Below, piece after piece: positions 3,096 through 6,754 of a stretch of 64,000 bases of DNA. Numbering within the stretch: the stretch's first letter is position 1; each line of letters opens with the position of its first letter. The DNA lies in contig NIVC01003097.1 in assembly GCA_002269645.1 (NCBI GenBank), positions 55,564-119,563 on the forward strand, read 5' to 3'. Position numbers and translations under genes: made by a program. The stretch comes from Macrostomum lignano (Eukaryota). The notes beneath the pieces were generated by a model. It saw only the letters and a list, made by a program, of their open reading frames with translations, was not told the DNA's origin and did no database searches.

Positions 3096-3610
3096 CCAAG
3101 GGGGATTTCGCCTCCCTGTCAATTTTTTTGCTGCGCCAGAACGGAGCAACGCAGGCACACGAAATTCAAGAACAAGAGCTAACTTTTTATAGGCTTTTTG
3201 GGCTTTCGGGCTTTTTGATCAGCGAAACTAAAGAAATTCGCATCAGGGTGTTGATAGTCACCTATTGCCACGTGTTGAAGGTCCAGATACTCCGCCTGGG
3301 TGAAGGCCAGTGACCACCGAAGCCAGAGCTGATGCAGACAGATGCGGTCGATGTGCTGATGAAATTTGGAGGCTTGTCAAGGCTGCACTGAGGCGCAGTG
3401 CTAATTGGCGCACAGGGGTGTACTGAATACACTGGCGCTTATGGGAAAAATCCGACCTTCTGGCAGAATCGTCGAATATCTCGACGGTCTGGAGGGCTGG
3501 CAACTTGATTCTTATTTGAGAAGGTGCGCAATAAAAAGTTAGCCCGTGTACTTGAAATTCGCGTTGCTCAGTTCCGGCGCAGCAAAAAAATTGTCTGGTC
3601 CCCCCCTTGG
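3096..3610. mobile_element. Non-autonomous TIR element (MITE-like) with TA TSD
   Basis: TA-CCAAGGGGG...CCCCCTTGG-TA. Imperfect inverted arms at about 3096-3190 and 3531-3610. Confidence 0.75.
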
Positions 3611-3622
3611 TAGTTCTACTGT

Positions 3623-5509
3623 CTCTCTCTCTCTCTCTCTCCCTCTCCCTCTCTCTCTCTCTCTCTCTCTCTCTCTCTCTCTCTCTCTCTCTCTCTCCTC
3701 TCTCTCTCTCCCTCTCTCTCTCTCTCTCTCTCTCTCACTCTCTCTCTCTCACACACACACATACACACAACAAGATCAAAATAGGAAATAAAGAACAAAC
3801 GTACAGGGTTAAAGAGAGTCAGAGAGAATCGGAGAGAGTCAGAGAGAATCGGAGAGAGTCAGAGAGAATCGGAGAGAGTCAGAGAGAATCGGAGAGAGTC
3901 AGAGAGAATCGGAGAGAGTCAGAGAGAATCAGAGAGAGTCAGAGAGAATCAGAGAGAGTCAGAGAGAATCGGAGAGAGTCAGAGAGAATCGGAGTGAGTC
4001 AGAGAGAATCGGAGAGAGTCAGAGAGAATCGGAGAGAGTCAGAGAGAATCGGAGTGAGTCAGAGAGAATCAGAGAGAGTCAGAGAGAATCGGAGTGAGTC
4101 AGAGAGAATCAGAGAGAGTCAGAGAGAATCGGAGAGAGTCAGAGAGAATCGGAGAGAGTCAGAGAGAATCGGAGAGAGTCAGAGAGAATCGGAGAGAGTC
4201 AGAGAGAATCGGAGTGAGTCAGAGAGAATCAGAGAGAGTCAGAGAGAATCGGAGAGAGTCAGAGAGAATCGGAGAGAGTCAGAGAGAATCGGAGAGAGTC
4301 AGAGAGAATCGGAGTGAGTCAGAGAGAATCGGAGAGAGTCAGAGAATCGGAGAGAGTCAGAGAGAATCGGAGTGAGTCAGAGAGAATCGGAGAGAGTCAG
4401 AGAGAATCGGAGAGAGTCAGAGAGAATCGGAGAGAGTCAGAGAGAATCGGAGAGAGTCAGAGAGAATCGGAGAGAGTCAGAGAGAATCGGAGAGAGTCAG
4501 AGAGAATCAGAGAGAGTCAGAGAGAATCGGAGAGAGTCAGAGAGAATCGGAGAGAGTCAGAGAGAATCGGAGAGAGTCGGAGAGAATCGGAGAGAGTCAG
4601 AGAGAATCGGAGAGAGTCAGAGAGAATCGGAGAGAGTCAGAGAGAATCGGAGAGAGTCAGAGAGAATCGGAGAGAATCAGAGAGAATCGGAGAGAGTCAG
4701 AGAGAATCGGAGAGAATCAGAAAGAATCGGAGAGAGTCAGAGAGAATCGGAGAGAGTCAGAGAGAATCGGAGAGAGTCAGAGAGAATCGGAGAGAGTCAG
4801 AGAGAATCGGACAGAGTCAGAGAGAATCGGAGAGAGTCAGAGAGAATCGGAGAGAGTCAGAGAGAATCGGAGAGAGTCAGAGAGAATCGGAGAGAGTCAG
4901 AGAGAATCGGAGAGAGTCAGAGAGAATCGGAGAGAGTCAGAGAGAATCGGAGAGAGTCAGAGAGAATCGGAGAGAGTCAGAAAATCGGAGAGAGTCAGAG
5001 AGAATCGGAGAGAGTCAGAGAGAATCGGAGAGAGTCAGAGAGAATCGGAGAGAGTCAGAGAGAATCGGAGAGAATCAGAGAGAATCGGAGAGAGTCGGAG
5101 AGAATCGGAGAGAATCAGAGAGAATCGGAGAGAGTCAGAGAGAATCGGAGAGAGTCAGAAAATCGGAGAGAGTCAGAGAGAATCGGAGAGAGTCAGAGAG
5201 AATCGGAGAGAGTCAGAGAGAATCGGAGAGAGTCAGAGAGAATCGGAGAGAATCAGAGAGAATCGGAGAGAGTCAGAGAAAATCGGAGAGAATCAGAGAG
5301 AATCGGAGAGAGTCAGAGAGAATCGGAGAGAGTCAGGGAGAATCGGAGAGTCAGAGAGAATCGGAGAGAGTCAGAGAGAATTGGAGAGTCAGGGAGAATC
5401 GGAGAGAGTCAGAGAGAATCGGAGAGAGTCAGAGAGAATCGGAGAGAGTCAGAGAGAATCGGAGAGAGTCAGAGAGAATCGGAGAGAGTCAGAGAGAATC
5501 GGAGAAATA
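3623..5509. repeat. Same cassette, copy 2, with 15-bp flanking direct repeat
   Basis: About 85 copies of the 20-mer. TGGTAGTTCTACTGT at 3608-3622 and 5510-5524. Confidence 0.95.
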
Positions 5510-6754
5510 TGGTAGTTCTACTGTTAATCCGCATATAGGCCGGCAGCCAGCTTGTTGTCAGGGCTGGCCTTTTTTAAAATGCAATTTCAGACAATAAAAA
5601 GCAAGCCGGATTAGGCAAGGCTAGAAAGAGAGACAGGATCGGTTTAAATTAAGCGCTGAAGTGAGGCCCGGAATTTCCCTTTCATCCTCATTCAGCTGTA
5701 GACAGACAGGCTGGATGCAGTGCGAGTGGGACAAGCAACGATTAGAAATCATTGCCTTTTGGTCCAGATTTTTCAATAAAAAATTGTCTGGGCCGCAGCA
5801 AATACTGAATAAAATCTGCAACTGGCAGCTGGGAATGGGAAGAGAATTTCATTTTCAGGAGTCATGTATTATTAGCTGCAAGTCATGCGCAAAGTTTGCT
5901 TAAAAAACTGTGAGGACCCTGATAAAAACACTGCTCTCAGTTTCTACTCCTCGCTACGGTTGCACCTGCAGAAGCCCTCATATAAGTCCTTCCAACCTTA
6001 CTCATCTATCCTCGTATTTGTATTGGGATGAGTTCTATTTTCTATCACATCGTGCATGGAATACTAAACCTAGGACTTACATCCGGATTGGAAACTGTTT
6101 GTTGATTTATTCAAATTTTCTGGCCACCTCCTTCTGATTTTTTGAGTGAAAGAAAGTCAATTAATCCTTACTGGGTGCAAAAAGATAAACTTTACTGCAG
6201 TTTCCAGTCCAGATTCTATGCGTAGAATAAGTGCATGGATTGCGCTGCAGTTTCCAGTCCAGATACTACACGCAGCATAGACGAATAGTCCATGGTTTTG
6301 TAGACGATGAACAGTTTCCAAATCCAAAGCCTGTTAATTTGTCGCAAGCCTGGCAAACAGATCAAGGTCTCCAATCATATGGGCTTCCGTGTGTGAAATT
6401 GATCTTGTTTTCCCACTGTTTTCTGTCCATCTTTTGCCTAATTAGCTATGAGCATGAGCAGTCCTTCAGTCATTAGTTTCGAGCAGATGGGGCTCATAGA
6501 GTTGGCAAACCGGACTGAAGCCTCAGCCATCATCATTAGTTATTCTTAATGAACTTTAGGAGAGAATTTATAATACAAGCTAGGAAAAATAACTGAGAAT
6601 CAGGAATAATGACTCAAAATGGTAAATGATCATTGAGAATCACAGATACTCACTGTGAATTATTGGTCATCTATGGGAATAATATACTAACATTATTGAT
6701 CATCAAGAGTGATTGAAAACCTTGGGTGATGATTAATCCAAGATCATTAGGAGT

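What the first reader, a model, noticed from the sequence alone, without database searches (positions are those of the whole stretch)
3608..5524. A microsatellite/minisatellite cassette that appears to have moved as a unit, with a 15-bp target-site duplication
Seen in sequence: the cassette (CT)n-(CA)n-47-bp linker-(20-mer)n occurs at 1456-2197 and 3623-5509 with an identical linker. Copy 2 is flanked by the exact direct repeat TGGTAGTTCTACTGT, while copy 1 shows no TSD. On the minus strand both copies share a 3' end with a (GT)n(GA)n tail and differ at the 5' end, inside the minisatellite. The TSD includes the last 3 nt of the adjacent MITE, so this insertion came after the MITE. Established: TSDs of about 15 bp, fixed 3' ends with simple-repeat tails and variable 5' ends are typical of target-primed reverse transcription. 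Inference: a non-coding, retro-mobilised minisatellite, which would be one route for satellite spread.
Basis: partly seen in the sequence, partly recalled or inferred. Interest (0 to 1): 0.7.

Follow-up and report, generated by a model that had tools for sequence, protein, structure and literature searches.

The report
Simple-repeat cassette inserted with 15-bp duplication
A 1.9-kb block made only of simple repeats was inserted as a unit into an intron of a flatworm-like receptor gene, 2 kb from a sister copy, but whether it moved through RNA or was copied locally as DNA cannot be decided from this window.

Summary
The cassette (CT)n-(CA)n-linker-(20-mer)n occurs twice, at 1456-2198 and 3623-5509. 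Only copy 2 is flanked by the exact 15-mer TGGTAGTTCTACTGT. That 15-mer occurs nowhere else in the window and is matched by 0 of 2000 shuffles.

Corrections:
- The duplicated 15-mer is the terminal 12-15 nt of the adjacent MITE, not its last 3 nt.
- The shared unique stretch is 57 nt identical, then differs at 3 of 4 nt at the array boundary.
- The "fixed 3' end / variable 5' end" is not diagnostic, because both ends lie inside length-variable repeats.

Both copies sit in consecutive introns of one opsin-like GPCR gene, on the same strand, 2.2 kb apart. A related MITE end at about 12.8 kb aligns across the reconstructed empty site.

An independent SINE-like insertion (42063-42422, 13-bp duplication, A-rich tail) shows that insertions carrying retroposition-type hallmarks occur in this sequence.

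So copy 2 is a real insertion. Mechanism is unresolved:
- Target-primed reverse transcription, about 0.45.
- Local DNA-templated copying from the neighbouring copy, about 0.35.

No other copy, partner LINE or empty allele could be searched, because the source genome is in none of the available collections. The idea itself is known (SVA2 and other VNTR retrotransposons). Interest is moderate to low.

The parts
3608..3622 (+). Left copy of the 15-bp target-site duplication TGGTAGTTCTACTGT. It coincides with the last 12-15 nt of the MITE's right terminal inverted repeat.
3623..3749 (+). Copy 2: (CT)n tract of about 64 units with CCCT and CAC interruptions.
3750..3770 (+). Copy 2: (CA)6 TA (CA)3 A. 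The CATACACACAA interruption is shared with copy 1.
3771..3810 (+). Copy 2: unique linker CAAGATCAAAATAGGAAATAAAGAACAAACGTACAG + GGTT. The first 36 nt are identical to copy 1.
3811..5505 (+). Copy 2: 20-mer minisatellite of about 85 units. It is heterogeneous, with about 30 variant half-units and a higher-order duplication in the distal part, and it ends abruptly in a partial unit GGAGA.
5506..5509 (+). Four extra bases, AATA, at the array-side junction.
5510..5524 (+). Right copy of the 15-bp target-site duplication.
1456..2198 (+). Copy 1 of the cassette: (CT)n 1456-1511, (CA)n 1512-1540, linker 1541-1580, then 31 near-perfect 20-mers 1581-2198. It has no flanking duplication and its flanks are unique in the window.
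3087..3622 (.). MITE-like element of about 535 bp that received the insertion at its right tip. Its inverted repeats lie at 3087-3190 and 3531-3619.
12456..12835 (+). Related MITE-like copy (core 93% identical). Its right end, ...CCTTAGTAGATATTGCTACTGTAAA, aligns across the reconstructed empty site, so it serves as a paralogous empty-site analogue.
326..612 (+). Exon 1 of the host opsin-like rhodopsin-family GPCR gene. Intron 1 (613-2255) holds copy 1.
2256..2592 (+). Exon 2 of the host GPCR gene. Intron 2 (2593 to about 7655) holds the MITE and copy 2. Exon 3 is at about 7656-7757.

Best explanation
Copy 2 (3623-5509) is a true insertion of a pre-formed, non-coding cassette into a staggered break with nicks 15 nt apart, at the tip of a MITE in intron 2 of a GPCR gene. 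The most likely route is target-primed reverse transcription in trans by a non-LTR retrotransposon enzyme acting on an RNA of minus-strand sense: 5'-(GATTCTCTCTGACTCTCTCC)n-linker-(TG)n(AG)n-3'.

Inferred steps: the + strand is nicked after ...CTACTGT (3622), and that 3'-OH primes cDNA synthesis on the simple-repeat tail. Reverse transcription then stops, or the template ends, inside the minisatellite. The 5' junction is sealed with 4 extra bases. The second nick, 15 nt away, gives the duplication on fill-in.

Shown: the insertion, its duplication, its boundaries, its age relative to the MITE, and the presence of another retroposon-type insertion in the same window. Inferred: the RNA intermediate, the strand, the enzyme, and whether copy 1 or an unseen master was the source.
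For: An exact 15-bp duplication flanks only the cassette. That length is in the 4-20 bp range typical of LINE-mediated insertions (PMC3287187) and above the usual range for cut-and-paste transposons (my own knowledge). There are 4 extra bases and essentially no microhomology at either junction. One end is a simple-repeat tract, which is the form of 3' tail used by many LINE clades (my own knowledge). On the minus-sense reading the first nick falls at TTA|AC, an A/T-rich site like the AAT|AAG site of the SINE-like insertion at 42063-42422, which has a 13-bp duplication and an A-rich tail. The array on the far side ends abruptly in perfect units, with no degenerate edge, as expected for a truncated copy. 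The two 15-mers are identical and the 57-nt unique stretch has no differences, while the MITE paralogues differ by 7%. The insertion is therefore young.
Against: Only one duplication-flanked copy is seen. The two copies are 2.2 kb apart on the same strand in one gene, which has P about 0.03 under random placement given two copies in 64 kb. There is no poly(A), although the SINE-like element in the window uses an A-rich tail. A compound (TG)n(AG)n tail is unusual. No LINE lies in the window; the only reverse transcriptase is in a Gypsy-type LTR element. There is no promoter-like RNA gene. The linker is unstructured on both strands, with a minimum free energy of 0. The 'fixed end' cannot be told apart from a breakpoint anywhere within (CT)n.
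Confidence: 0.45

Rival explanations
1. Local DNA-templated copying. A stalled fork or a broken end at the MITE tip switched template to the neighbouring cassette 2 kb upstream, landing in its (CT)n tract, which is prone to H-DNA. It copied through the linker into the array and returned 15 nt behind the point of departure, producing an apparent target-site duplication. This is a FoSTeS/MMBIR-type event or synthesis-dependent repair, possibly of a transposase-induced break at the MITE end.
For: The copies are 2.2 kb apart, on the same strand and in the same gene. The only other recurrences of an array family in the window are also local: 31801/32074, and 41593/42425, which is one array split by a SINE-like element. 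Both breakpoints lie in repeats that form non-B DNA, and (CT)n is 73-77% complementary to the GA-rich array. The break sits within 0-3 nt of a transposon terminus. No feature specific to RNA (poly(A), promoter) is present.
Against: An exact 15-bp flanking duplication with 0-1 nt of microhomology and 4 extra bases is not the usual signature of microhomology-mediated template switching. The GGTT/AATC difference at the linker-array boundary means present-day copy 1 is not the exact template. Copy 2's array is about three times longer than copy 1's and more diverse.
Confidence: 0.35
2. Insertion of a free DNA fragment, for example extrachromosomal circular DNA released from a tandem array, or movement by an unrecognised DNA transposon. 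Ligation into a staggered break would then be followed by fill-in.
For: There are extra bases and no microhomology at the junctions. Tandem arrays are a known source of circular DNA (my own knowledge).
Against: The cassette ends carry no terminal inverted repeats beyond low-complexity complementarity. A 15-bp duplication is outside the usual fixed 2-11 bp of DNA transposons. Helitrons make no duplication. Nothing explains why a random fragment would start exactly with the (CT)n tract.
Confidence: 0.1
3. Assembly artefact or simple tandem duplication.
For: Long, perfect arrays are hard to assemble, and copy 1 is suspiciously perfect (99% matches).
Against: Exons 1, 2 and 3 lie in the correct order between and around the copies. 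Nothing else between the copies is duplicated. Copy 2 has its own variant pattern. An artefact would not create an exact 15-bp duplication of a MITE tip.
Confidence: 0.03

Closest known systems
SVA2 and the VNTR composite retrotransposons of hominoids (SVA, LAVA, PVA, FVA)
   Same: They are non-coding, non-autonomous units built around a variable tandem array. SVA carries a CT-rich simple repeat at one end, and SVA2 is described as VNTRs fused to short unrelated sequence. Their insertions carry 4-20 bp duplications, and array length varies between copies (PMC3287187; PMC4432496 abstract).
   Different: Those elements end in poly(A), insert at TTTT/AA, exist in hundreds to thousands of copies, and have been mobilised by L1 in experiments. 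Here there is no poly(A). The CT-rich repeat would be at the 3' end on the TPRT reading rather than the 5' end. Only one duplication-flanked copy is known, the host looks like a flatworm, and no partner LINE is known.
5'-truncated copies of LINEs, or their SINE partners, that end in simple-repeat tails and carry tandem repeats in the 3' UTR (CR1, L2, RTE and Rex-type elements)
   Same: They have a simple-repeat 3' tail, a duplication of variable length, heavy 5' truncation, and they seed micro- and minisatellite families (reviews PMC3812793 and PMC9659126; tail types from my own knowledge).
   Different: No LINE sequence adjoins either copy. The tail is a compound of two dinucleotide repeats. 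No 3' stem-loop is predicted.
Tandem-repeat-carrying MITEs and Helitron derivatives (pearl/CvA in bivalves, DINE-TR1 in Drosophila, miDNA4 in Xenopus)
   Same: A short mobile unit with a central tandem array that spreads proto-satellites (PMC9659126).
   Different: Those move as DNA, with terminal inverted repeats and short fixed duplications, or with none for Helitrons. This cassette has neither, and here the MITE is the target rather than the carrier.
Templated insertions and complex local rearrangements from replication template switching (FoSTeS/MMBIR)
   Same: A copy of a nearby segment is inserted a few kb away in direct orientation, with breakpoints in sequence that forms non-B DNA (my own knowledge).
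   Different: Such junctions usually show 2-5 nt or more of microhomology and no clean 15-bp flanking duplication.

Membership tests
LINE-dependent non-autonomous retroposon (TPRT hallmarks as listed for SVA in PMC3287187) | Flanking target-site duplication of variable length, about 4-20 bp | tested here: met
   An exact 15 bp at 3608-3622 and 5510-5524
LINE-dependent non-autonomous retroposon (TPRT hallmarks as listed for SVA in PMC3287187) | Poly(A) or LINE-type simple-repeat tail at a fixed 3' end next to the duplication | tested here: inconclusive
   No poly(A). On the minus strand a compound (TG)n(AG)n abuts the duplication, but a breakpoint anywhere in that tract would look the same
LINE-dependent non-autonomous retroposon (TPRT hallmarks as listed for SVA in PMC3287187) | Many dispersed copies, each with its own duplication and a range of 5' truncations | not testable with these tools
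   Only two copies in the window, one with a duplication. No hits in metagenome, prokaryote-genome, protein or literature searches. The source genome is not held
LINE-dependent non-autonomous retroposon (TPRT hallmarks as listed for SVA in PMC3287187) | A partner LINE sharing the 3' end | tested here: not met
   Within the window only: there is no LINE, and the linker matches nothing else. Genome-wide this is untestable
LINE-dependent non-autonomous retroposon (TPRT hallmarks as listed for SVA in PMC3287187) | Endonuclease target consensus at the first nick | tested here: inconclusive
   On the minus-sense reading the nick is at TTA|ACAG, compared with AAT|AAGT for the SINE-like insertion. That is one case each
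SINE | Internal Pol III promoter derived from tRNA, 7SL or 5S | tested here: not met
   No tRNA and no Rfam family at E<=1 other than a chance miRNA hit far below its threshold
TIR DNA transposon / MITE carrying a tandem array | Terminal inverted repeats at the element ends and a short duplication of fixed length (2-11 bp) | tested here: not met
   The ends are (CT)n and a GA-rich array, which share only low-complexity complementarity of 73-77%. The duplication is 15 bp
Helitron / Helentron derivative | No target-site duplication | tested here: not met
   A 15-bp duplication is present
Simple tandem or segmental duplication | The intervening or adjacent unique sequence is duplicated with the repeat | tested here: not met
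   Only the cassette is shared between introns 1 and 2

The most novel reading that the evidence does not exclude
The cassette is itself a mobile unit: a promoter-less retroposon made only of simple repeats plus a 40-nt unique linker. It would be recognised through its (TG)n(AG)n tail by a flatworm LINE, and elements like it would be a main source of the exceptional tandem-repeat load of these genomes (15% in Macrostomum lignano, 42% of this window). A second unexcluded novelty is that the priming 3'-OH was the nick a transposase makes at the MITE's 3' terminus, so that a DNA-transposon end served as the primer for templated insertion.
Probability: 0.15. Interest if true: 0.65.

Novelty: new member of a known kind. 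Interest (0 to 1): 0.35.

Why it matters
If the cassette is confirmed genome-wide as a mobile family, it would be an invertebrate counterpart of the primate VNTR retrotransposons. It would give a concrete, testable route by which minisatellites are seeded across a genome notorious for tandem repeats. If instead it is a one-off local copy, it is an ordinary structural variant in an intron. On present evidence it is a clean, young, well-delimited insertion. That makes it a good PCR or long-read marker for presence/absence polymorphism, but it does not demonstrate retro-mobilised satellites.

Tried and rejected
1. I searched for more copies outside the window and found nothing.
- Linker and 20-mer dimers against metagenome contigs and prokaryotic genome contigs.
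- The open + frame of the cassette against the 5.8-billion-protein set (no hit below E = 0.17).
- Sequence strings in the literature.

2. I tried to reach alleles or homeologues of the locus through exact-protein look-ups of five ORFs or proteins. None is on record.

3. I tried to fix the species with a formin FH2 query and got no hit. The only lead is a 64%-identical Macrostomum lignano GPCR fragment.

4. I tested whether other arrays in the window carry flanking duplications. None exceeds 10 bp.

5. I tested copy 1 for a degenerate duplication. There is none.

6. I looked for a structured 3' element in the linker. It is unstructured on both strands.

7. I looked for RNA-gene heads. There are none.

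8. I considered that the right-hand 15-mer is a remnant of a second MITE. I rejected this: it is only the terminal 15 nt, followed at once by non-MITE flank.

9. I considered a piggyBac-type MITE with TTAA. I rejected it because there is no matching flank at the left end.

10. I considered the + strand as the RNA sense, which would give a CT-rich 5' end as in SVA. This is less likely: the 3' end would be a bare AAATA, the nick site CT|TGG is not A/T-rich, and the pattern would be 5'-intact and 3'-variable, the reverse of TPRT.
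Full report
**What is there.** The first 7 kb of the window and Tandem Repeats Finder show the same composite twice on the + strand.
- Copy 1 runs from 1456 to 2198: (CT)n, then (CA)10 TA (CA)3 A, a 40-nt linker, and 31 near-perfect copies of GGAGAGAGTCAGAGAGAATC (99% matches).
- Copy 2 runs from 3623 to 5509: a longer, interrupted (CT)n of about 64 units, then (CA)6 TA (CA)3 A, the linker, and about 85 units (95% matches).
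- A 36-nt core of the linker occurs exactly twice in 64 kb, against 0 expected.
- All 124 matches to the 20-mer lie in these two arrays.

**The flanking 15-mer.** TGGTAGTTCTACTGT occurs only at 3608-3622 and 5510-5524, even with two mismatches allowed.
- A flank-against-flank alignment scores 15/15, and 0 of 2000 shuffles reach it.
- The same test on copy 1 gives a score reached by 35% of shuffles.
- Copy 1's flanks match nothing else in the window.

**Corrections of detail.**
- The two copies are identical over 57 nt: the end of the (CA) tract, with its shared TA interruption, plus 36 nt of linker. They then differ at 3 of 4 positions, AATC against GGTT, just before the first array unit. Copy 1's version looks like the end of an array unit. 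This suggests array homogenisation has overwritten it, so present-day copy 1 is not the exact template of copy 2.
- The neighbouring MITE-like element has inverted repeats at 3087-3190 and 3531-3619. The outermost arms, 3087-3104 and 3602-3619, are 16/18 complementary. The duplicated 15-mer is therefore the MITE's own tip, not its last 3 nt.
- Four extra bases (AATA, 5506-5509) separate the last partial unit (GGAGA) from the right-hand 15-mer.

**Context.** The cassettes lie in a gene.
- Exon 1 (326-612) and exon 2 (2256-2592) splice in frame, with a GT donor at 613 and an AG acceptor at 2254-2255.
- Together with a last exon near 14.67-15.07 kb they score as a rhodopsin-family 7TM receptor (Pfam 7tm_1). 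By eye the last exon carries an opsin-like lysine in helix 7.
- The only protein relative found is a Macrostomum lignano receptor fragment, 64% identical.
- Local tblastn with that fragment places exon 3 at about 7653-7757.
- Copy 1 is therefore in intron 1, and copy 2, with the MITE, in intron 2. Both are in the gene's orientation.

**The genome.** It is probably a macrostomid-like flatworm, but this is not established.
- A formin FH2 query found nothing.
- Five exact-protein look-ups failed.
- M. lignano is reported to have 15% simple and tandem repeats (PMC5730564). In this window arrays make up about 42%.

**Copy 2 is an insertion.**
- I joined the flanks with a single 15-mer and aligned the result to a related MITE-like copy at about 12.46-12.84 kb, whose core is 93% identical.
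- The alignment runs across the insertion point...CCTTGGTAG--TTCTACTGT|TAA against ...CCTTAGTAGATATTGCTACTGTAAA. After that the two sequences diverge into unrelated flank.
- The paralogue thus acts as an empty-site analogue.
- The insertion point lies within 0-3 nt of the MITE terminus.
- The two 15-mers are identical while the MITE paralogues differ by 7%, so the insertion is younger than the MITE.

**This is not the general mode here.**
- None of the other roughly 28 TRF arrays tested in the window has a flanking direct repeat longer than 10 bp. Mismatched flank pairs reach that length by chance.
- Comparison of all array consensus units finds only three recurrences, all local: the cassette pair, an inverted pair at 31801/32074, and the 34-mer at 41593/42425.

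**An internal positive control.** The last of those recurrences is one array split by a 360-bp insertion at 42063-42422.
- Its head contains, by eye, near-consensus Pol III A and B boxes (TAGCCCAGCGG ... GGCTCGATTCC). ARAGORN and Rfam do not call it.
- Its tail is ...CTCTAATAAA, and it is flanked by the exact 13-mer AAGTATGGAGCAT.
- A 72%-identical older copy lies at 55539-55796.
- Among all direct repeats of 13 bp or more outside arrays, only this pair and the cassette pair bracket a recognisable discrete insert. The other short pairs were not followed up, or only in part.
- So insertions with retroposition-type hallmarks and 13-15 bp duplications do occur in this sequence.

**Mechanism: the case for target-primed reverse transcription (TPRT).**
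- The duplication length fits.
- The junctions have extra bases and essentially no microhomology.
- One end is a simple-repeat tract.
- The array side ends abruptly in perfect units.
- On the minus-sense reading, the first nick falls at an A/T-rich site, TTA|AC, resembling the SINE-like element's AAT|AAG.
- SVA and SVA2 show that VNTR-based, promoter-poor RNAs can be mobilised this way (PMC3287187).

**Mechanism: the case against TPRT.**
- There is no poly(A), although the SINE-like element in the window uses an A-rich tail.
- A compound (TG)n(AG)n tail is unusual.
- The linker has no predicted structure on either strand.
- No LINE is in the window. The only reverse transcriptase belongs to a Gypsy-type LTR element at about 58.4-62.8 kb.
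- The 'fixed end' cannot be told apart from a breakpoint anywhere in (CT)n.
- The two copies are 2.2 kb apart on the same strand of one gene. Given two copies placed at random in 64 kb, a distance of 2.23 kb or less has probability about 0.07, and with the same orientation about 0.03.

**The rival mechanism.** The proximity favours DNA-templated copying from the neighbour: template switching or break repair, perhaps at a transposase-nicked MITE end.
- Supporting this, (CT)n and the GA-rich array form non-B DNA and are 73-77% complementary.
- Against it stand the clean 15-bp duplication, the lack of microhomology, and the GGTT/AATC difference.

**Weights.** I put TPRT at about 0.45, local DNA copying at about 0.35, other DNA routes at about 0.1, and an artefact at about 0.03. 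The artefact is unlikely because exon order is intact, nothing else is duplicated, and copy 2 has its own variant pattern.

**Comparison with what is known.**
- The idea that transposable elements carry and seed tandem repeats is well reviewed (PMC9659126; PMC3812793).
- The closest analogues are SVA2 and the VNTR composite retrotransposons.
- This cassette cannot be filed in any family. It meets the duplication criterion only. It fails the SINE, TIR-transposon and Helitron criteria. Multiplicity and a partner LINE are untestable here.

**What could not be done.** Every route to other copies, an empty allele or the source genome came back empty.

**Verdict.** This is a genuine, young, well-delimited insertion of a simple-repeat cassette. 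Retroposition is plausible but unproven. It is best classed as a new member of a known kind, of moderate to low interest.

Noticed in passing
window 42050-42435: A 360-bp SINE-like insertion (42063-42422) splits a 34-mer minisatellite. By eye it has near-consensus Pol III A and B boxes, and its tail is CTCTAATAAA. It is flanked by the exact 13-bp duplication AAGTATGGAGCAT. ARAGORN and Rfam do not call it. An older copy, 72% identical, lies at 55539-55796.
   Followed up: partly
window 1-64000: About 42% of the window is minisatellite arrays. There are more than 25 arrays with periods of 16-62 bp, almost all of unrelated units, mostly in introns of two GPCR genes and a formin gene.
   Followed up: partly
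window 58372-62827: A Gypsy-type LTR retrotransposon. It has RVT_1, RNase H and integrase domains, and two LTRs of about 226 bp or more that are nearly identical (58372-58597 and 62602-62827, starting with TG). It therefore looks young.
   Followed up: partly
window 6148-6163 and 10599-10614: The exact 16-mer GAAAGAAAGTCAATTA is repeated 4.45 kb apart, bracketing three minisatellite arrays. About 0.1 such pairs are expected by chance. It could be the duplication of a larger insertion or a coincidence.
   Followed up: no
window 31801-32855: A 16-mer array and a 32-mer array of the same unit lie in inverted orientation on either side of a 35-mer array, giving a local palindromic arrangement of minisatellites.
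   Followed up: no
window 3698-3745 versus 3931-4556: The (CT)n tract is 73-77% complementary over 48 nt to the GA-rich 20-mer array of the same cassette. The cassette could therefore fold back, or form triplex (H-DNA), and it sits next to a (CA)n tract prone to Z-DNA.
   Followed up: no
window 5766-5806: A solitary fragment of the MITE's inverted-repeat core (AAAAAATTGTCTGG followed by GCCGCAGCAAA) lies 250 bp downstream of the cassette, in permuted order relative to the MITE at 3087-3622.
   Followed up: no
window 2619-3015: A different 20-mer array (TGAGGCAGAAGGGTGGGTGT) starts only 27 nt after the exon 2 splice donor. Minisatellites here sit very close to splice sites.
   Followed up: no
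window 3623-3810 (+ strand): Read on the gene's strand, the cassette presents a very long polypyrimidine tract followed by CAG/AAG and then a purine-rich array, which resembles a strong cryptic 3' splice site plus enhancer-like repeats. Any effect on splicing of the host gene is unknown.
   Followed up: no
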